A DNA stretch of 64,000 nucleotides, from NCBI GenBank assembly GCA_977030845.1, contig OZ365112.1:15004001-15068000 (forward strand). The letters are read 5' to 3'. This DNA is from Fimbriosthenelais zetlandica (taxonomy: Eukaryota). Below are positions 491 to 60,300 of the stretch, one piece after another; position 1 is the stretch's first letter; every line of letters begins with the position of its first letter. The translations under genes and the position numbers were made by a program. The notes under the pieces are model-generated. The model was given only the letters and a program-made list of their open reading frames with translations. It searched no databases and was not told where the DNA came from.

Positions 491-2356
<1,866 letters not shown>

Positions 2357-2547: not shown

Positions 2548-2966
2548 GATAGATCGCGAGAAATCTGCTTTATGAAATCTTCCTTTGTTTAATAACCAGC
2601 TTTAAAGAAATTCTAAACGTATTAAACCTGTTAAACTGTAAGAATGAAAATAACACAGTCTGAAAGAACGAATTTCCATTTGCTAAGAAAAAGCAAAGTT
2701 AAATTACTTTCCAGAATGTTAATTTTTATCTCATGGCTTGTTATGTACAGAAGCAAACTATCTGGGAAGCAACTAAACGCATATGAATTGCCAATAATAA
2801 CAGTCTTAACATCACTAAGCCCATGCAGCTTAAGTAACTGATCTTAACGTGATTAAATATTCAAAGTCCCTTTATCATATGTCCCTCTGATACATAAACC
2901 ATCCTTAACAGCCATCACATCACTATTAACCTCTCTCATTCGCTAACATTCAGAACATTCAGCCTC

Positions 2967-5158
2967 TCAGGACTTTTCCCCCTTCTTGCCGATGAGCTTG
3001 GTCCGCCAGTGTAGAAGCTGATCAAATTCTTCCTCGTCTATATCACTGTCAGAACCAGACCCGTCCTCTTTACGACCCACTTGTGAATCCTTTGACATCA
3101 GTTCCTCTTTTTTCTTGGCCAGGTTATCCACTTTTGACCATCGATGTCTACAATAAAGAGTACATTACAGGTAAAAGACTCATAAAGAATCATAATTTTT
3201 TTTAGATTACATCATTCAGAAGAAATAAAATTCAGATTTTGTTAACTCACATTTGTTCATCAATCTCATTGATATTTCTCTCGCTAATCAATGCCTCGTC
3301 ATCCTCCTCTTGAATAGCCTCCGAGATCTATAAAGATAAACATTCAGCCATATTTACTTTCCATCAAAATTAAACAAATTAATATTATGGGCGAATGGAA
3401 TGACTAAAGCCAAAAGTCATTGCAGTGATCATGGATAAATTCTTGACTATGGTACTTACAGTTGCTTCCTCCTTCATGGCTTTCTGGAAAAGTTCCCACT
3501 CGTCGTCAAGCTTGTCTCTATACTCCACTTTCCTCACCTATAAAAATAGTAATCCTACATTCAGCAATTTAAATCAAACAGGATACATTTGTAGCATCAA
3601 GGGCCTACTCGGAACATTTTCCATGGGATCCATATATCTAATTTATATATAATGACATGCGCAAGAGTGAAATGTCGAACCTTAGCGTCTTGTTTGGGGT
3701 CATCGAAGAATCCTTCTGGAAGTTTCTCGGCCATAGACACCTCAGGTTTTACTTCTTCTGTCGCTGGTTTGGAGGGTTTAGCAGAGATACCAGGGTCGAA
3801 GAAATCTGTAAATCCAAAACATAAATCAGCATGTTAGAGAAGTGAAAGTGCCCTCACGCTCAGTAGAATTGTAAAGTTTTCAAGTTAAGATCGTGTTAAT
3901 TTCCAGAAGTATTCTCATTCCATTAAAATTTTGGAAATTTAGAGATAAATTAAATTAAAAACATAATGATTCTTTAAACAAAATAACAGGAGGAATAACC
4001 TGCGGGCAGGCCAGGCGTGTCTGTCTTTGGTGCTGTGGTGGAAGCTTGATTGTTAGACGAGGTATTGTCGACCTCCATCTCCTCATCTGAAGATTCATAT
4101 CCACCCAAACCGAGACCTGTCCCTCCTTCTCCAACCTTTTCCTTATCAAAGAAATCTGCTGGAACACTGAAAGGCAACGTGAATGCAATATTCGGATCAG
4201 TAAGATCTTATTTGACAGTTCAAATCACATTTTACTATGAGTAGGATTAGGATTTCCTAGCCACTTACCCTTTCGTGCTTGACCCTGATCCATTTGATGC
4301 CACTGCAAACAGAAAAATCATTACTGGTATGAAAGTTCATATACCCTAAATTTATATACCCTAAGCATAATGTTTAATATTTGTTCCTTCTAGTTCTATA
4401 AGTCACATTCAATTGAGCAAGGGTAATTAAGATGTTTACATTTTGCATGTTTGGCTGAGTTATCTGCACTTCCCCCTGGATGTGCACGCTTGAGAGAACC
4501 TGGAGGTAAGGCCACAGACGGCGTGTTTTTTGCTTCATTTCTTAGTTTCAGGGCAGTGACATTCTGAAAAATGCATTTGAAATATTTATAGGTACCATAA
4601 GACAATTATGGAAATTGAAATACCAGAGCAGAGACTGAAGAACTTAAGAACCATGTTTACCGTCTGGAACTACCCATAGAATATTAGAAATCTAAGTACG
4701 GTAGCCTATATTTAATATATCTGTCAATGACAATGGGGAATAATTTTCTTTACCTCTTTATGTGTTCGTCCCTGGATATGTGCATTCCAAAGGAGTTCCG
4801 ATTTGATTTGGGAATTGCACACAACACACACCAGCTGTCCAATGGAGTTGTATGTGCCATAGGTTAAGGGGGAAATACTAAAGGAAGAAATTACTAATGA
4901 TCGAATTGGGGAGCAATGTTTTAGGCCTACCGCCTATCGAAAGCAATGCACCTCAGGTGAGCGATAATAGGGAAACATCACAAAGCTAGGCAATATCGTC
5001 TTATTTAGTAAGTCAAAATAACATTTAAAAGGATATTTTGCAAGCGGGGAGTCGATCTTCTTCTTGGCTGTCTGTTGCGTGACTTTCTTCTCTCGCATTA
5101 GACGACGGAGATCATCTTTGGAAACAGGTTTTTTGCTTCCCTTGCTACTGGCCGCCAT
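2967..5158 (-). CDS. ZNF830: Zinc finger protein 830 (CCDC16/OMCG1) orthologue, spliceosome-associated, 335 aa; complement(join(2967..3147,3251..3327,3460..3537,3681..3805,4000..4166,4269..4302,4440..4563,4754..4853,5037..5158))
   Basis: Nine exons join in frame (1008 nt, ending in TGA). DLRRLMREKK..IDSPLAKYNSIGQLVCVVCNSQIKSELLWNAHIQGRTHKE matches the remembered human N-terminus ([50 protein letters not shown]), including the C2H2 finger. Also present: LPEGFFDDP..DAKVRKV, DDEWELFQKAM, EIDEQI and a C-terminal WR.K. Intron 1 is AT-AC; the others are GT-AG. Confidence 0.95.
4854..5036 (-). other. ZNF830: U12-type (minor spliceosome) AT-AC intron, ZNF830 intron 1, 183 nt, phase 2
   Basis: On the - strand the 5' end is GCAAA|ATATCCTTTT. 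The branch site TTTCCCCCTTAAC lies about 10 nt before the 3' end, CTATGGCAC|ATAC. Removing the intron restores AA+A TAC = Lys-Tyr of the conserved SPLAKYN motif. Confidence 0.93.
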
Positions 5159-5687
5159 TTTGGATTTTGAAGTGCTCCGGTGGAGCCACCGCACGGGAAA
5201 ACCGTGCACTACGCAGCAACCGGAAGCGGTAGTTCCACTTCCGTCCGCTTGAGGTCGAGGCAGTGAAGCTTGAACATGTGGAGCTTGCGGTGTAAGGATT
5301 TCTGGCGGATTTATATATGTGTCAGGGTGTGCTGCGGTGGCCTACATGTGGCCGTGTTGTCATTTCGTTAAGGTGGTCATCCTTATTTGTAAACTTTCTT
5401 AACAAACTGTTTCTCAAGATACCAGAGCCCCGGAGACTGCGCCATGGATCTGTTGTTATTCTACATGACTTGAACACGTGGCTGATCAATCTGTGTGGAT
5501 TACTAAACACATTTATTACCTGTTTTCAAGTTTGGATCATCCGAAGCGAGAAGCCTCCCCCTAAAGGCTAAACAGTCCCACATACTCAGTGAGGGAGGCG
5601 GGCAAGTCCTCGTAAACGGTGGAACAATGTCTTGTTTTCCTTTTAAATCAGTGGTCTGACCGTGGGAAGAAGTTAAGCAGTGCCAAC
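5159..5687. promoter_or_regulatory. Bidirectional promoter shared by ZNF830 (-) and the MPRIP-like gene (+)
   Basis: The start codons are 529 bp apart, head-to-head. CpG-rich from about 5040 to 5350. Inverted ETS cores ACCGGAAGC (5219-5227) and CACTTCCGT (5236-5244). A YY1 consensus (CAAAATGGCGGC, - strand) overlaps the ZNF830 ATG. Confidence 0.65.
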
Positions 5688-5810
5688 ATGGATACCAACA
5701 CAGTGTCATGGTGTAAAAAATTCCAGGCGAATATCTTCAACAAGAGTAAATGCCAGAATTGTTTTAGGCCTAAAGAGCAGCATTCAGCTGAAGCTCTGGA
5801 ATCAAGCAAG
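5688..5810 (+). CDS. MPRIP: MPRIP-like coding exon 1 ([41 protein letters not shown])
   Basis: Near-identical to the remembered human [29 protein letters not shown]. Start context AACATGG; donor AAG|GTAAGT, phase 0. Confidence 0.95.
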
Positions 5811-6083
5811 GTAAGTTGACACGCCGGTAAAGTTTTCAATACACACCTCACGGAGCTCTATTAATAGTTATTAGGCCTAACGTTATTAATTCATTTTGAC
5901 ATAACAGTCATTGTATAGAGCTGTCATTATGGTACGGTATAATAGTATAATAGTTTTTGATGTAAGGTTATTTTGATTTGTGTATGCTAATTCGTCACAT
6001 TTTATTACAAAATTATTACAGCAGATAACTTTTGCAACATTTAATATTAGAGACTCTAATATATTAGATAACAATGTTGCAAG

Positions 6084-35200: not shown

Positions 35201-38200
35201 ATGGAGATCTTTACTTAACGTTAGACTGGAAAATGTTTTGTGTCTGGCTCTGGGCCTTGCTCTCTCTCCACCTTGAGTCTGAATTCACAATAAGTGCGAG
35301 TAAATATGATAACTGTGTGAAGGGAAACCTCCCATTTTAAGTGCCAAGAAATTTCAAGTTCACTAGAAGGCTTGCCCTTGGGTACGTTCATTCTCGGTCA
35401 ACAATATTAACTTTGCTTCATTTTCTTCTGTTGTCATTTCTTAACTACATGTATATTGGTCTACACTGAAACAATGCTGTAACTCTTTGTAGCTTTTTCA
35501 CAGTGATATTTCTGCATTAGTGACATAATAACTGGCATATCAATAGCTCGAGACATATTGGGGCCTCAAAAACTTCTTTATGACTGTCTCAAATCCCTGT
35601 GAGAAAGTTCCCACCATGTTAAGTCATTGGTAATGGTTTTGTCCCCTAGTTATGTGGAACAGGCTTGCATGTTGTGAATACATTATAAATGATATAGATG
35701 TCTGTTCCTTCCCTGTCTCTCTATGTATGTGTGTGGTTTCATGGTCATGTTGCATGCCTCCAGGGTCTAACACGCTAGCCAGAGGTCAGCACCAGCCCAA
35801 CCATTGCTAAATCTGCACTCACCAGAAAGACAGATTTAATATCTGCACTTCCCACTACATTGCTTCCTACCATTGTTAGAAAGGAAACCATCGTCCTCAG
35901 TTCATTCTGCGAACGGAGGTCGTGTTTTCTGTGCTGTGCACTCAGATTTTTCCTTTTCTATTTAATAGTAAAGATGATATCCTTTTGATAGAGGGTTGTT
36001 AAAAGAAGAGTTTGCTAAAAGAAGTTTTATTCCTCTCCAAGGCCACTTGCAGGCATTATTTATAGTCCTAACATTGACTTAATTATCACCAGTTTGAACA
36101 AAGAGTTGTTGCCCATGGCTTAAAAAACTATCTATAATTTACATAAGAGAATCCTGATTGAATACATTAAGTTAATGAAATTAATTGAAAACATCCCTTC
36201 CTTGCTAGGTCCCCGGGAGTTATGATTAGCATTGCAAATACAGAATGCCTGGGAGAAGGTGGAAGGAAGTGAGAGTAGGGGGAAGTTTTGTATTGGTGAT
36301 GAAGCAGAATCCAGACATTCCTACGTCTCTCACTGATTTCTGATCACCTTTATAGAGGTCACTCCCCTCAGGCCTATATGTTTAAATTGAGCCTGGAATG
36401 GCCGTGGGTGTCTTTTGAATCCCTGATTCTGTCATTCCCATAGATCACCTGTGGCATCTCCTTATTTCTGCATGTCATGGAACTTTATACTGACCCTGAA
36501 ATAGTGGTTCCCCAAACAAGACCAGATCTTGTTATAGATTCTGTGGAACTAATATTAAACTTGAAAAGAGATGCCAGATCTGTGTTTTTTCATGTTATAC
36601 ATGTCTTACCATAGCCTGGCTTTGATCTGTGTTCCCTTGACAACACATTTAAACTGCCATGATGCAATGTTAACTGAATAAGATACCGTCCCTGGCCCAT
36701 GGCAATGACTGTATTTAGACTTTGACAGGTTGCTAGTACCCAGTGATTAGAGAAAGCAATTTAAGGTGAAGTTAACTCTCGTGAGTTGTCTCCTTCTGGA
36801 GGGTCTGACATCTCCAAACGCCAATACAAGTGGTGCATAAAAAATAATTCAACAAATTAAGTTGTTAGGAAGTCTTTTGAAAAAGACATCATTACATAGT
36901 GAAAGATATAAAAATAGGTCTTTTGGGTGGTTCACTCCATCCTTGTGAAATTGAATCTTCCTGACTTGGTCCTCTCTGATCTTTATGGAGAAGTGACTAT
37001 AAATTGTAATTTTCCCTAATTTGAGTATTCCTATGCATAAATAATGTGCTATGTCAAACATCAAGTGTACAATAGGTATGAAATTAGTAGATAATATAGA
37101 AACTTTAAAAGACCCTTTGGACTCTGGATAGCTTACGATACCATTAAGTTTACTTACTTTTTGAAGGTATCACTAAGTTCCCCCTTGCAAAAGAATGGAA
37201 GTCAGCCTCTGAGCATATATTTTGCCACTATTTGAACCAGTGTATTATTCGTGGATCCTATTGCCAGCCTCTAATTGGCCAGCATTTGGTCAGGAGAGCT
37301 GATAAGATCTTCTCGCGTGGTGTCACAGACGCTCTCCGTGCCACCCTGGCTTACTATTTACGTCATTTCAGACGTCATTCGACCATGTAGAGGGACTTCA
37401 GTTCAAGGACCACCCATTCTCACATAGCAGTCCTTCAACAATTGCAAAATGTCATAACTCGATGACATTGTTTCTCAAATTGCTCGAACTTTGAACCTGT
37501 CCCGGTGGATAAGTCTGGTGGGGCCCTATCTGCCAGCTTCCGGGCCTCATTTCTGTGCCAAAAAGAACATAAACTGAAGCCTGGATAAAAATGGAGAGTG
37601 TAAAAAATTGTGCACTTAGAACACACATACATTGTTTGCAATAGAGAACTTGGTGATAAATTGCCCGGTTTTTGCCAGCTGTAAACCACTTTCTCTTACA
37701 AAATTGATTTACACTTTGTCCTCTGAAATGTACTGTTCAGTTTTAACAATGGAAGAATACATTCTAAGAACAGTTTTGAACATTAAAGCAGATGAATCTG
37801 TTCTTCACATTTGTGATAAAAATGATCTTTCCTATAGTGACCAAGCCAAATATCCTACACATCCCTGAGGGTCGATTTTACTCTTGGAATCCCAGAACGA
37901 GCACCATTCTGTACACACGCTTACCACAGGAGTGTGCATTGAGTGATTTGAATGAATATTGAATGAGTTTAACCCGGTGATTGGTAATGAGATTCTCAGT
38001 TAGCTAGACCATTATGTTCTCTGCTAGTTTGTATAACCGTGTCCTTACACGTTTGGTCTTCTATTGATGAACTACTATTGATGTACTGAGGAGTTAATAA
38101 TGAGATATGTAAGAGTTGGCTGTTGTTCGGACCCTTTTAGAATACCAGTGGACAGACACTAGGTTCACTGAAGCATCACTTGGTCAGTTTATAATCAGTT

Positions 38201-43302: not shown

Positions 43303-44202
43303 ATGATGTCGTCTGACAGTGATAACTTGGCCTGGTACTGTAGCCTGTGTGGTCACAACCATTCAGCCTATAAAGAACCAATCTCACTCTCCTTGTCTGA
43401 CGATGAAGATCCATTACCTCCCTTAAGTGGACCCTTCCATTGTCACCTCGCCAGCTTAACTTCCAGGCCATGTTCTGCACAAAATCTATATGGGTGCATA
43501 CCCCCTGATCCCTGGTCATCCATGGGCGATGGGATTCCACAATTGAAAACGCACCAAGAGACCAGTTATTTGAACCACACAAACAGTTATCAAAATTGGC
43601 CTAATGGTAGAAACATATCAAGTGGATCAACTCCATTTAGCAGATTCAAAAAGACTAAAGGCTACTCACATAATGGAAGAAAAGCTAAGATAAAGTCATT
43701 TCTGCATTTTGATACCAGACCTACAACACAAACGCATAGAAATAAATGTAGGGTATCGATGAGTCTCAAAATTCCAAAATCTCTAAGGAATCCTGTCATT
43801 AACAGTCACTTAAACAGTAGTTCAGTACGGGATTGTCCACCTATCAAAAATGATGTACTGAATCATAAGTTCCAGCATGAGATTCCTTCTGACCAAGGAT
43901 TTTGGAGAGGATCTGATGTAAATCGTTACAAATCATCATCTGCTCGGACTAGATTTGAAGACCAAAGACTTGATGTTGAAGAACATTCACTCAGTGCTCA
44001 TAATCTTGACCAAAACTTTAGAGCAGATGGAAAAGTGCAGCAAAATTGCCAAAATAAGAGATCAAACTGCCCTGGATGGGTTGAGGAACTTTGTCAATTA
44101 GAAAGAGCAGACTCTGATTCTGAGGTTGGTCACCCCCTAAAGAATATCAAAATAGCATCTATAAGTTTTGTGCCAATTATTAGCAGGTTAATCATTTTGT
44201 GA
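43303..44202 (+). CDS. 299-aa Ser/Asn/Lys-rich ORF just upstream of exon 4; putative large alternative first exon of the MPRIP-like gene
   Basis: 900 nt open in AT-rich intronic DNA, where a chance ORF this long is very unlikely. It ends 97 nt before exon 4. In-frame donor candidates: GAG|GTTGGT (44124, phase 0, fits exon 4) and CAG|GTTAAT (44186, phase 2, fits exon 5). Confidence 0.65.
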   Translation: MMSSDSDNLAWYCSLCGHNHSAYKEPISLSLSDDEDPLPPLSGPFHCHLASLTSRPCSAQNLYGCIPPDPWSSMGDGIPQLKTHQETSYLNHTNSYQNWPNGRNISSGSTPFSRFKKTKGYSHNGRKAKIKSFLHFDTRPTTQTHRNKCRVSMSLKIPKSLRNPVINSHLNSSSVRDCPPIKNDVLNHKFQHEIPSDQGFWRGSDVNRYKSSSARTRFEDQRLDVEEHSLSAHNLDQNFRADGKVQQNCQNKRSNCPGWVEELCQLERADSDSEVGHPLKNIKIASISFVPIISRLIIL

Positions 44203-56492: not shown

Positions 56493-57365
56493 ATGAAGAA
56501 CATAGGGATCTCCAGAGGATCAAGGTCGTCAGACGGTGAAGGCAGTACCCTGGAGGAGGTGAGGTCAGTGGGCATCAGGTGGGTCAGTCAGGGTGACCTC
56601 TACGATGACCACCACCCTGACCATCACAGTCCAGTTACTGTTAACAGGAGCAGAAGTATGTCAGAAGGCCTTGACTTGCTGAGCACAGACAGACGACATA
56701 GGAACAAACTCACATCCAGAACTGAACTGCTGGTACCCAAAAGCCCAGAGCAACAGAGAAATGCTGTCATGTTTCAAGTCAGGTCTCCACATGGGACTCC
56801 CAGAATGGGCAGGCGTTGTCTGCAAGGGACTAAGACTAGGATTTCATATGAGGAACATTCTAATTCCCCTCTCCCTACCGGACCCACCAATACAAGACAG
56901 AGAAGACAAAGGAGAGAGAGGAGGAGAAGGACATTTTGTACTCCAGGGGATCCATCCCTATCAGGGAGCTCTCCTCGTCCACAGGAGACTTCCCACCCTC
57001 AAGCCATGGGCAATTCATCAGAAATCCCTGGTGTCACACCCATGAACAATACGAGTTCCCAAAGGCGAATGAGACCTGGCCCACTGTCAACAGATAATTA
57101 TTCTAACCAAGAGGACATGTTGAACTTGAGAAAGGTGTTGTCAGGGTACAATGATGGCATACACAAATTTAAAAACATTCAATCCGGAAATTTAGCTGAA
57201 AATCCTTTTAGCAGAAAAGATAGGTCTGTGAAGAGAAATGGCAGTCTGATTGACAGTGTAAAGGAGGGTGACCCTACTCGCACAAAGATTGGTCTTCGTA
57301 TTCAAGCTAGAGTAAGCAAGTCTCCTGATGGTTTGGACAGAATGACTGTCTATCGATTGGTCCAG
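56493..57365 (+). CDS. 291-codon Ser/Arg/Pro-rich exon ending at a strong donor; putative large alternative first coding exon of the MPRIP-like gene
   Basis: An 882-nt ORF, clearly more GC-rich than its flanks. The donor CAG|GTAAGA at 57365/6 is exactly in phase 0, two codons before the ORF stop. No good acceptor upstream. The assignment to MPRIP is inferred from strand and position. Confidence 0.68.
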
Positions 57366-60300
57366 GTAAGATAGTGAAATAAATAAAGAAATCACATAAG
57401 ATGATGTATGTGTGGTGATATATATGTGATCTACATTTCTTTACTCTGTGGAGAGTTTTGAGTGGTATGAACTTAACCATGCAGAGGGGCTAGATGTTTT
57501 TATTGTTAGTGTTTGATATGTTTCACACACTCTCTTCCTGACTGACACAGTTTAAACAAAGGACCTGTTCTTTGACAGAGCTTCCTTCTCTATGGTTTTG
57601 TTCTTTGAATCTTGGGAAAGTGAAGGGTGTGCATACATGTACATTTAAGAAAAACACAAAATACATCTCTCAATGAGCATTGTCATGTACATTCTATATG
57701 TATTGACATTTGGATCAGTCGTTGCGATTTGGTTAGGCAACAGAAGGCTTCTTGTCTTGTGAACCAGAAGAGGAATATTTTGGACGCGTCTATACTAGAG
57801 TGGTGGTATACCTGGCTCCACTCATGTAGTCCTTCCTCGCATCGCTTCTCAAAGACAATGTTAGTTTTGATCATAATCTTCGGTATCAACGTACGCAAAA
57901 TTTAGACCTCAATACCTCTATTGTTCTCGTGTGTCCAAGAACAGACAGTTAATTGGGGATGCTTCATGGAGGCTTCAGTCTGGGTAATGATCTTGACTGT
58001 TGGCCGATGTCATTAACACATGCTTTGTAATGATAACTAATATGCAGAAATCATCAGAAGTGATTAGTGTTGATACTTGACTCTTCAGTATTTGGAATCG
58101 TATGTAGATTAGGATAGAATGACAAATCTTTAGTTGCCGTGACAGGAGCTGGTTGATCAAGATATTAAATTCCTGTGGTTTCTTCCCTGACAGAATTAGC
58201 CACAGCTGACATCATTGTAGTTTGATAAAGGACATTGCCTTTGTCATGACTGATAGATAATGTTGCATTTCATTTCATCATTACAAACATAATCCATCCG
58301 TGGACGGTTGACATGACATGTATGATTATGAATGTCAACCTTTCATTATGTTCTGAAGCATTTCTGACAGACCATCTTGTTTGGCTTGCATGGTGATGTC
58401 TGCTTTGGTAATATGCATCACCAGTGTTGTTATCCACAAGTAAGGAATGTCTAGGAGATCAAGAAGTACTCCATTCAAGGTGTCTTAAATTGCTGTGCTT
58501 CAATGGCCTGCTCTTCAACCCTGCTCTTTTTCAAATTCCTCAACCCTAAACTCTATGACACCTTTGGGTCTACTCTGATAAGATCAAATCCTCTGAACCC
58601 AACTTAGTTTTGCCATATGCTTTTAGGGAAACAATACCCCTGGACACAATTTATTCTTACAAAGTGAATGGGCTGTACCAGCCCTTGACCCCCTGTCGTT
58701 GAATCTCTAGTTTGTTTCTATAGGAATCTTGCCATTTTAACTCGGGAAATGGTGACGGAATGGTCATTCATTTTTCAGTTATAGGTGTAACATGGAATAT
58801 TTGGGTTTAATATTTTCTTCGGTGGTTGTGCTTACATTTTGATTTTACCAATTGAGGCATCATCAATATAGCAGAAGGTAAGTTCTTATAAATATTTAAA
58901 GATGTATTCAGAAATGTCGAAACTGTACACCTTAAGTCCTCTGGCATTTATCAATAGCTGAAAAGCAGAAGACAGCAACCAGGGGTATTGTTGAGTAAAT
59001 GGGGTTCTCTTAATCTCTTAAATCTTTTCAGGAATTAATTCCTTTGATCAGTCACTCACCGAGTTAAAACTAGTGTAAATATCTGGACCAAACATTTCCA
59101 AAAGGGGCTTAACTCTGAATTTCAACATCTGCATCATTGACTTATCGCTCTTATTGAGAAAGCCATTGACTTCACTCCAAGCAAAAGCTGGCCTCGTTTT
59201 CTGGCATACCAGAGCTGCGTTTAACCCCTATAATGGTATTTGGTAACGGAGTTGATCATTTCCCGAGCGTTGACAAGAGGAGAGAGTTGAGAGGTCGTGT
59301 CTGGAAAGTTTGTAATGCGGGTGAAAGGCGTGGAACGACAAGCCTATTATCCAGACCATCAATTTGATAGGAGATAATTGAGGTGGGATCGATTACTGCT
59401 CTTTCTACCTGGAGCCATGCTGGCTTTAGGGGAGGGTATGAACTTTCTACATTCCTACCCTTAACCTGTCTCAATATAGAACAAGTTCTCACTATATACG
59501 CAATATATTATGTAATGACAATTTTTAGAAGACCCTAAGACAACAAAGCGATCCACATCCTACTGGACCGAACATGTCTATATGACTAGTTGATGGTTTT
59601 CCCAACCATATTTGTCCCAGAATAACAGAAGACCCTTGGAACAACCCTTCCAGTATTTTGGCACTTTCGGTTCATATCAATGCCCCGGTAAACAAGAGGA
59701 ATACCTAGTCGTAAACCATATCTCTGATCCTAAACAACACCCGTATGAACACATGCATGTAGAGCATGTCAGACATAGGAAGGCCCCCATCCTTTATCCC
59801 CTAAACATATGAAGCAGAGCTACCATTACAACCCATCCCTAATCTGTCTTCATAGCTAGGTTTTCAAGCAGATCCTCAGCTGACAAATGGATTAAGCTGT
59901 TTAGCCTAAACTGTGAGATATGTCAGTCGTGCTTGATCATATCTAGTTACCTGGTCGTCCATGTTCTAATACCTGCTCCATGTATTGAAACCAGGTTTCA
60001 TAGGGCTTTCATGTTGGGTTAGGTTTTAGCATGTATATGTATAAGGCTAATATTGTTTGCCCATGTGGGTATTGTAATATGATCCCAAGCCACCTGCTAC
60101 CACTGAATACGATAACACTAATCCTGACTCCATTCTGGATCTCAAGAGATCATCGTCAACTAGTATACATCTCTTGAGATGATCCCATATGTGAGACTTA
60201 CTTACATCCAATAACTGACAGGAAAATCCATCCATGTACTGAGGACATTTGCCCAAAACGGTTTAGTTTACTTTGTTCATTGTTTCTTATGTATTTATTC

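What the first reader, a model, noticed from the sequence alone, without database searches (positions are those of the whole stretch)
4854..5036. Minor-spliceosome AT-AC intron gating the zinc finger of the splicing factor ZNF830
Seen: no GT donor exists where homology requires one. Instead there is a textbook U12 5' site (ATATCCTTT), a CCCTTAAC branch site about 10 nt from the end, and a terminal AC. Excision restores SPLAK|YNSIGQLVCVVC exactly. Retention reads 34 codons into the intron and stops at 4936-4934, giving a 74-aa product with no zinc finger and a premature stop. Established: U12 introns are rare, AT-AC is their minority subtype, and they are often slowly spliced. ZNF830 associates with the major-spliceosome intron-binding complex (XAB2/AQR). 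Inference: here the minor spliceosome could rate-limit a major-spliceosome factor. GT-AG-only gene predictors will mis-model this gene.
Basis: partly seen in the sequence, partly recalled or inferred. Interest (0 to 1): 0.8.

Follow-up and report, generated by a model that had tools for sequence, protein, structure and literature searches.

The report
Known U12 intron in ZNF830 gene
The first intron of this animal's ZNF830 (CCDC16) gene is very probably a real minor-spliceosome AT-AC intron, but the same ancient intron was described in the fruit fly and non-mammalian vertebrates in 2010, so it is an ordinary conserved feature.

Summary
On the minus strand, a 9-exon, 334-aa ZNF830/CCDC16 orthologue runs from ATG 5158 to stop 2972-2970.

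- **Intron 1:** it spans 5036-4854 (183 nt). It starts ATATCCTTTT, carries CCCTTAAC with the branch A 10 nt from the end, has no pyrimidine tract, and ends AC.
- **Other introns:** the remaining seven are all GT-AG.
- **Splicing outcome:** excision gives SPLAK|YNSIGQL, which aligns without gaps to orthologues. Retention stops at 4936-4934, giving 74 aa.
- **Alternatives:** none of 21 in-frame GT/GC-AG pairs restores the conserved sequence.
- **Conservation:** an intron sits at the same codon and phase in every intron-bearing orthologue I fetched.
  - AT-AC U12-type: Lingula, Owenia, sea urchin, Anopheles.
  - AT-AG U12-type: the coral Porites.
  - GT-AG with a U12-type donor: Octopus.
  - U2-like GT-AG: a clam and amphioxus.
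  - No intron: the fish Chanos.
- **Not tested:** no sequencing run was listed for this genome, so the junction has no transcript evidence.
- **Novelty:** low. Lin et al. 2010 describe this orthologous U12 AT-AC intron in fly CG11839, frog, chicken, zebrafish and lamprey, and its mis-annotation with a U2 donor. Fly work shows CG11839 protein falls when minor splicing fails.
- **"Gating":** a regulated gate is untested. Repeated conversion and loss of the intron argue against it being essential.

The scan holds two unchecked U12-intron notes elsewhere in this genome.

The parts
5037..5158 (-). Coding part of exon 1 of the ZNF830/CCDC16 orthologue. ATG is at 5158. The exon ends after the second base of codon 41 (K), so the intron is phase 2.
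   Evidence: The N-terminus aligns to orthologues.
4854..5036 (-). Intron 1, 183 nt, U12-type AT-AC.
   Evidence: An orthologous intron sits at the same codon and phase in 8 other animals.
5028..5036 (-). U12-type 5' splice site ATATCCTTT.
   Evidence: The 9-mer is identical in Lingula, Owenia, S. purpuratus, Porites and Anopheles.
4863..4870 (-). Branch-site motif CCCTTAAC. The likely branch A is at 4864, 10 nt from the last intron base. No pyrimidine tract follows it.
4854..4855 (-). Terminal AC of the intron.
4934..4936 (-). In-frame TAG reached if intron 1 is retained. The product would be 74 aa with no zinc finger.
   Evidence: ORF 4934..5209.
4754..4853 (-). Exon 2, which holds the whole U1-like C2H2 zinc finger (YNSIGQLVCVVCNSQIKSELLWNAHIQGRTHKE).
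   Evidence: zf-met 29.7 bits (cut-off 21.2) and zf-C2H2_jaz 25.7 bits (cut-off 22.6).
2970..4563 (-). Exons 3-9: 4563-4440, 4302-4269, 4166-4000, 3805-3681, 3537-3460, 3327-3251, 3147-2970. The stop TGA is at 2972-2970. All intervening introns are GT-AG.
   Evidence: Exon 7 matches ZNF380_CC at 33.5 bits. Exon count and boundaries match Lingula, Mercenaria and Octopus.

Best explanation
Intron 1 (5036-4854, minus strand) of this spiralian-like animal's ZNF830/CCDC16 gene is a genuine U12-type AT-AC intron. It was inherited from at least the cnidarian-bilaterian ancestor.

**Shown here**
- The sequence carries the full U12 signature at the exact base where the protein homology breaks.
- The same codon and phase carries a U12-type intron in a brachiopod, an annelid, a sea urchin, a mosquito and a coral.

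**Inferred from established knowledge of minor splicing**
- The U11/U12 di-snRNP pairs with ATATCCTTT and CCCTTAAC.
- U4atac/U6atac.U5 then join, and the intron is removed to join K41 to Y42 just before the zinc-finger exon.
- The gene therefore needs the minor spliceosome for expression, as every minor-intron gene does.
- A retained intron gives a 74-aa truncated product with a stop upstream of seven further junctions, which is a likely nonsense-mediated decay substrate.

There is no evidence that this dependence is used as a regulated gate. It is best read as a conserved, constitutively spliced minor intron.
For: - **Sequence:** ATATCCTTTT donor, CCCTTAAC with its A 10 nt from the 3' end, no pyrimidine tract, terminal AC, 183 nt.
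- **Gene model:** 9 exons and 334 aa. The other 7 introns are GT-AG.
- **Homology:** the spliced protein aligns end to end at about 49% identity to Lingula, bivalve and nemertean ZNF830. There is no gap at SPLAK|YN.
- **Alternatives:** none of 21 in-frame GT/GC-AG pairs keeps IDSPLAKYNSIGQL.
- **Orthologous intron at the same codon and phase**:
  - AT-AC with ATATCCTTT and a TCCTTAAC-like branch site in Lingula, Owenia, S. purpuratus and Anopheles.
  - AT-AG with the same motifs in Porites.
  - GTATCCTTAA...TCCTTGAC...AG in Octopus.
- **Literature:**
  - Fly CG11839 (ZNF830/CCDC16) intron 1 is a catalogued U12 AT-AC intron (PMC2831892).
  - It is orthologous to U12 introns in frog, lizard, chicken, zebrafish, platypus and lamprey (Additional file 1 of that paper).
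  - CG11839 protein is lower in miso-null fly ovaries, where minor splicing is impaired (PMC12084885).
  - AT-AG U12 introns are a known minority class (PMC1557818).
- **Same genome:** two other first-reader notes of U12 introns exist. They are unchecked.
Against: - There is no transcript evidence from this organism. No sequencing run was listed in either search, so the junction 5037^4853 is inferred.
- No minor-spliceosome snRNA gene lies in the window, so the machinery is not shown directly for this genome.
- The branch motif starts CCC rather than the commoner TTCC/TCC.
- The donor 9-mer alone occurs at chance frequency in the window.
Confidence: 0.88

Rival explanations
1. Regulatory gate. 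The U12 intron is kept because slow or regulated minor splicing sets the level of ZNF830. Through the XAB2/Aquarius intron-binding complex, this would tune the major spliceosome.
For: - U12 identity at this position is kept from a coral to insects and spiralians.
- The fly orthologue's protein level drops when minor splicing is impaired.
- Its transcript was among the minor-intron transcripts reported as reduced or mis-spliced in Smn-mutant fly larvae.
- ZNF830 is reported as a member of the XAB2 / intron-binding complex (PMC6315705).
- Lin et al. raise the same cross-talk idea for fly SF3A1.
Against: - The same intron is U2-like in Mercenaria and Branchiostoma.
- It is absent in Chanos.
- Per the literature it is absent in mammals and is a U2-type intron in plants.
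- So U12 dependence is dispensable for the gene.
- Loss of protein on minor-splicing failure is expected for any minor-intron gene, and it does not show regulation.
- Nothing conserved beyond the splice signals was seen in the short introns.
- No retention data exist for this organism.
Confidence: 0.1
2. The major spliceosome removes this region through a cryptic GT-AG or GC-AG pair. The AT-AC look is then coincidental.
For: - One search lists 21 in-frame GT/GC-AG pairs without stops.
- A fair U2-like acceptor (TTTCTTCCTTTAG) ends at 4878.
Against: - Every such pair deletes or inserts residues in the most conserved stretch, IDSPLAKYNSIGQL.
- Their donors are weak (GTCACG, GTTATT or GC).
- The AT-AC arrangement recurs at the same base in five distant animals.
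Confidence: 0.03
3. It is a U2-dependent AT-AC intron, the rare class with a U2-like donor apart from its terminal bases.
For: Such introns exist (PMC1557818).
Against: - The donor is ATATCCTTT, the U12 consensus. It is not a U2-like donor with changed termini.
- A U12 branch motif lies 10 nt from the 3' end, with no pyrimidine tract.
Confidence: 0.02

Closest known systems
Drosophila melanogaster CG11839 (ZNF830/CCDC16 orthologue) intron 1, one of the 19 catalogued fly U12-type introns (Lin et al. 2010, PMC2831892).
   Same: - Same gene family and same AT-AC subtype.
- It is the first intron, just before the zinc finger.
- A dipteran orthologue read here (Anopheles bellator, L008) has the intron at the identical codon and phase with ATATCCTTTC...TCCTTAAC...AC.
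- It has the same risk of mis-annotation with a false U2 donor.
   Different: - The fly gene has only this one intron. The window's gene has eight, seven of them GT-AG.
- I did not read the D. melanogaster locus itself. Position identity with fly rests on the Anopheles locus and on the paper.
U12 intron of CCDC16/ZNF830 in frog, lizard, chicken, zebrafish, platypus and lamprey (Lin et al. 2010, Additional file 1, example 2).
   Same: A multi-exon gene with one U12 intron among U2-type introns, said to be orthologous to the fly intron.
   Different: - Those are vertebrates. The window's protein groups weakly with non-molluscan spiralians.
- Their loci were not read here. The shark gene was too long to fetch.
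Minor-intron genes that encode major-spliceosome parts, such as fly SF3A1 (CG16941).
   Same: A factor of the major spliceosome whose own mRNA needs the minor spliceosome. Lin et al. point this out explicitly for SF3A1.
   Different: - It is a different protein and complex.
- In neither case has a regulatory use of the dependence been shown.

Membership tests
U12-type (minor-spliceosome) intron, AT-AC subtype | 5' splice site matching [A/G]TATCCTT from the first intron base. | tested here: met
   ATATCCTTTT at 5036-5027.
U12-type (minor-spliceosome) intron, AT-AC subtype | TCCTTAAC-like branch site close to the 3' end, about 8-20 nt away. | tested here: met
   CCCTTAAC at 4870-4863, with its A 10 nt from the last intron base. 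This is one mismatch from the commoner TCCTTAAC.
U12-type (minor-spliceosome) intron, AT-AC subtype | No pyrimidine tract between the branch site and the 3' splice site, and terminal AC. | tested here: met
   The tail after the branch motif is CTATGGCAC.
U12-type (minor-spliceosome) intron, AT-AC subtype | Orthologous introns in other species are U12-type. | tested here: met
   - U12-type in Lingula, Owenia, S. purpuratus, Anopheles (all AT-AC), Porites (AT-AG) and Octopus (U12-type GT-AG).
- U2-like in Mercenaria and Branchiostoma.
- The literature agrees.
U12-type (minor-spliceosome) intron, AT-AC subtype | The spliced junction is observed in transcripts. | not testable with these tools
   The look-up of sequencing runs listed no run in either search, so read laying could not be used.
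U12-type (minor-spliceosome) intron, AT-AC subtype | Excision depends on U11, U12, U4atac and U6atac, and the organism has these snRNAs. | not testable with these tools
   - Only this window of the genome is available, and Rfam finds no RNA gene in it.
- Two unchecked notes of other U12 introns in this genome exist.
ZNF830 / CCDC16 protein family | N-terminal U1-like C2H2 zinc finger. | tested here: met
   Exon 2 alone scores zf-met 29.7 bits and zf-C2H2_jaz 25.7 bits. Both are above the curated cut-offs.
ZNF830 / CCDC16 protein family | C-terminal ZNF380_CC coiled coil (PF23406) and full-length collinearity with named orthologues. | tested here: met
   - Exon 7 scores 33.5 bits against a cut-off of 28.
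- BLASTP aligns residues 1-326 of 334 at 49% identity to Lingula ZNF830, E 4e-93.
- Alignment.

The most novel reading that the evidence does not exclude
The U12 status of ZNF830 intron 1 has been actively kept for over half a billion years, from coral to spiralians, insects and echinoderms. On this reading it couples the supply of an intron-binding-complex protein of the major spliceosome to minor-spliceosome activity. Lineages that converted or lost the intron (clam, amphioxus, teleosts, mammals) would have rewired that coupling.
Probability: 0.08. Interest if true: 0.5.

Novelty: already known. Interest (0 to 1): 0.2.

Why it matters
**Annotation:** the correct gene model needs an AT-AC junction at 5037^4853. 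A GT-AG-only predictor would delete or pad the most conserved part of the protein, as once happened to the fly orthologue.

**Biology:** this is one more lineage that keeps a very old minor intron, one that even the intron-poor fly retains. It implies that this organism has a working minor spliceosome.

**Side result:** one orthologous intron position shows almost the whole known range of states across animals. These are AT-AC, AT-AG, U12-type GT-AG, U2-type GT-AG and complete loss. That makes a tidy illustration of subtype switching and U12-to-U2 conversion, but both processes are already described.

**The cross-talk idea:** the minor spliceosome feeding a major-spliceosome factor has been raised before and remains untested as regulation.

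Tried and rejected
- **RNA evidence:** two searches for sequencing runs (RNA over 2900-5300, any kind over 4400-5250) listed nothing. No junction test was possible.
- **Rfam on the whole window:** no RNA family, so no minor snRNA gene here.
- **Motif statistics alone:**
  - RTATCCTTT occurs twice against 2.2 expected.
  - My first gapped pattern used too short a gap and found nothing.
  - A loose donor + branch + terminus scan returns about 95 chance combinations.
  - The second exact ATATCCTTT, at 35977 on the plus strand, is not at a recognisable exon end. I rejected it as a second U12 intron.
- **PDB by sequence:** exon 2 hits only generic U1-like fingers. A shark ZNF830 finds no solved chain, so there is no structural context for the finger.
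- **Locus look-ups that failed:** Lineus and Tachypleus proteins were not on record. The Heterodontus gene was too long to return DNA.
- **Exon 9 against the 1.84-billion-protein library:** only 4 hits, but one full-length orthologue (P0003) opened the family.
- **Organism:** the tree places the protein only weakly among non-molluscan spiralians. I did not resolve it further.

Full report
**What is in the sequence**

The gene lies on the minus strand. Coding exon 1 runs from ATG 5158 to 5037 and ends ...GAC TCC CCG CTT GCA AA. The next bases are ATATCCTTTT (5036-5027). There is no GT at the junction. The nearest GTs are at 5083 and 5022.

CCCTTAAC lies at 4870-4863, followed by CTATGGCAC. The last C is 4854, so the likely branch A (4864) is 10 nt from the intron end and no pyrimidine tract follows it. 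Exon 2 begins A TAC AAC TCC ATT GGA CAG at 4853.

Joining 5037 to 4853 gives ...IDSPLAK|YNSIGQLVCVVCNSQ.... The intron is 183 nt and phase 2. Read-through from the ATG gives 74 codons and then TAG at 4936-4934.

**Gene model**

From I read nine coding exons:

| Exon | Coordinates |
|---|---|
| 1 | 5158-5037 |
| 2 | 4853-4754 |
| 3 | 4563-4440 |
| 4 | 4302-4269 |
| 5 | 4166-4000 |
| 6 | 3805-3681 |
| 7 | 3537-3460 |
| 8 | 3327-3251 |
| 9 | 3147-2970 |

Together they make 1005 nt, or 334 aa plus the stop. Introns 2-8 are all GT-AG with ordinary pyrimidine-rich acceptors. Only intron 1 is AT-AC.

Exon 2 alone passes Pfam's cut-offs for the U1-like fingers zf-met and zf-C2H2_jaz. Exon 7 passes the cut-off for ZNF380_CC. 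So the U12 intron sits immediately before the exon that holds the whole zinc finger.

**Identity of the gene**

Exon 9 searched against the 50%-cluster library found a 309-aa protein, P0003. Searching with P0003 returned 405 proteins. Those listed that carry a source name are almost all called zinc finger protein 830 or CCDC16, from cnidarians to vertebrates.

The spliced window protein aligns over residues 1-326 at about 49% identity to Lingula, bivalve and nemertean ZNF830, with E values down to 1e-95. A multiple alignment has no gap at the exon 1/2 junction. A tree puts the protein, with weak support, among non-molluscan spiralians. I did not resolve the organism further.

**Is it more than chance?**

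The donor 9-mer alone is not significant. RTATCCTTT occurs twice in the window against 2.2 expected, and a loose scan gives many chance donor/branch pairs. The case rests on placement and conservation.

I enumerated all in-frame, stop-free GT/GC-AG pairs around the junction. There are 21, and every one deletes or inserts residues in IDSPLAKYNSIGQL, the best-conserved stretch of the family.

**Comparative test**

I fetched the genomic loci of nine orthologues and mapped their proteins back onto the DNA. All eight intron-bearing genes have an intron after the second base of the K/R codon in SPLAK|YN. This is the same codon and phase as in the window.

| Species | Termini | Length (nt) | Signals | Type |
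|---|---|---|---|---|
| Lingula anatina | AT-AC | 174 | ATATCCTTTT...TCCCTAAC | U12 |
| Owenia fusiformis | AT-AC | 759 | ATATCCTTTC...TCCTTAAC, A 9 nt from end | U12 |
| Strongylocentrotus purpuratus | AT-AC | 992 | TCCTTAAC, A 11 nt from end | U12 |
| Anopheles bellator | AT-AC | 101 | TCCTTAAC, A 18 nt from end | U12 |
| Porites lutea | AT-AG | 171 | ATATCCTTTG...ACCTTAAC, A 10 nt from end | U12 |
| Octopus bimaculoides | GT-AG | 6007 | GTATCCTTAA...TCCTTGAC, A 19 nt from end | U12 |
| Mercenaria mercenaria | GT-AG | 9447 | GTATATTT...TTTTCAG | U2-like |
| Branchiostoma lanceolatum | GT-AG | not computed | GTATGAAG...pyrimidine tract...TAG | U2-like |
| Chanos chanos | none | - | gene translates straight through | intronless |

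The exon count and the other intron positions also match between the window and Lingula, Mercenaria and Octopus. This is strong independent support that the window's intron is a true U12-type intron of great age.

**What is already known**

- Lin et al. 2010 (PMC2831892) list fly CG11839 (CCDC16/ZNF830) intron 1 as one of 19 fly U12 introns. It is AT-AC and is absent in human.
- Their Additional file 1 makes four further points:
  - FlyBase and RefSeq had mis-annotated the gene with a U2 donor 26 nt upstream.
  - Placental mammals and other fish are intronless through retroposition.
  - Arabidopsis and rice have a U2-type intron at the orthologous position.
- The same file notes, for SF3A1, that building the U2-type spliceosome depends on U12-type splicing.
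- CG11839 intron 1 is used as a reference U12 intron in Li et al. 2020.
- CG11839 protein is significantly lower in miso-null fly ovaries, where minor splicing is impaired (PMC12084885).
- Its transcript was among the minor-intron transcripts reported as reduced or mis-spliced in Smn-mutant larvae.
- AT-AG U12 introns, and their possible role as intermediates of subtype switching, are described by Sheth et al. 2006.
- ZNF830 is reported as a member of the XAB2 / intron-binding complex with Aquarius, ISY1 and PPIE (PMC6315705). No ZNF830 chain was found in the PDB by sequence.

**Mechanism**

*Shown:* the signals, their placement and their conservation.

*Inferred from established knowledge of minor splicing:*
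- The U11/U12 di-snRNP recognises the donor and branch site.
- U4atac/U6atac.U5 complete the spliceosome.
- Excision yields the K41|Y42 junction.
- Expression of full-length ZNF830 therefore requires the minor spliceosome.
- A retained intron gives a premature stop upstream of seven exon junctions, which is a likely NMD target.

*Not shown:* any regulated or rate-limiting use. The intron has been converted to U2-type at least twice (clam, amphioxus). It has been lost in Chanos here, and in mammals according to the literature. This argues that U12 dependence is tolerated rather than required.

**Limits**

- No sequencing run was listed for this genome, so the junction has no transcript support here.
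- The window contains no snRNA gene.
- Two other first-reader notes of U12 introns in the same genome exist, in ADAM10 and in Lon protease. I did not check them.

**Verdict**

The gating idea is unproven (about 0.1). Novelty is low, because this is the known, ancient U12 intron of ZNF830/CCDC16 seen in one more animal.

Noticed in passing
L001-L009 (orthologue loci), intron 1 of ZNF830: One orthologous intron position shows nearly the full known series of states across animals:
- AT-AC: Lingula, Owenia, sea urchin, Anopheles and the window.
- AT-AG with U12 signals: Porites.
- GT-AG with a U12-type donor and branch site: Octopus.
- U2-like GT-AG: Mercenaria and Branchiostoma.
- Intronless: Chanos.
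   Followed up: partly
window 850-2000, + strand: Exon-like ORFs of a short-chain enoyl-CoA hydratase (ECHS1-like), for example ...[13 protein letters not shown]..., ...[11 protein letters not shown]..., ...[25 protein letters not shown]... and ...[16 protein letters not shown].... The gene converges tail-to-tail on the 3' end of ZNF830. I identified it by eye only.
   Followed up: no
window 5688-5816, + strand: A divergent neighbour starts about 530 bp upstream of the ZNF830 ATG, with a Cys-rich opening ([32 protein letters not shown]...). It has no Pfam match. The two genes probably share a bidirectional promoter, and a CTTCCGG element lies at about 5222-5228 on the minus strand.
   Followed up: partly
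L004:5252-5316 (Owenia) and L007:1-413 (Porites): In both an annelid and a coral, the gene next to ZNF830 is a molybdenum-cofactor-sulfurase-like gene (Aminotran_5 + MOSC_N + MOSC) on the opposite strand. This may be old synteny. No such gene was noticed next to ZNF830 in the window.
   Followed up: no
window 35977-35985, + strand: This is the second exact ATATCCTTT in the window. It is preceded by AT-rich, non-coding-looking sequence and is not at a recognisable exon end. It is most likely a chance match, since about 2 are expected per window.
   Followed up: partly
window 43303-44202 and 56493-57374, + strand: Two long Ser/Arg/Pro-rich ORFs of 299 and 293 aa have no Pfam family. They may be large exons of an unidentified gene.
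   Followed up: partly
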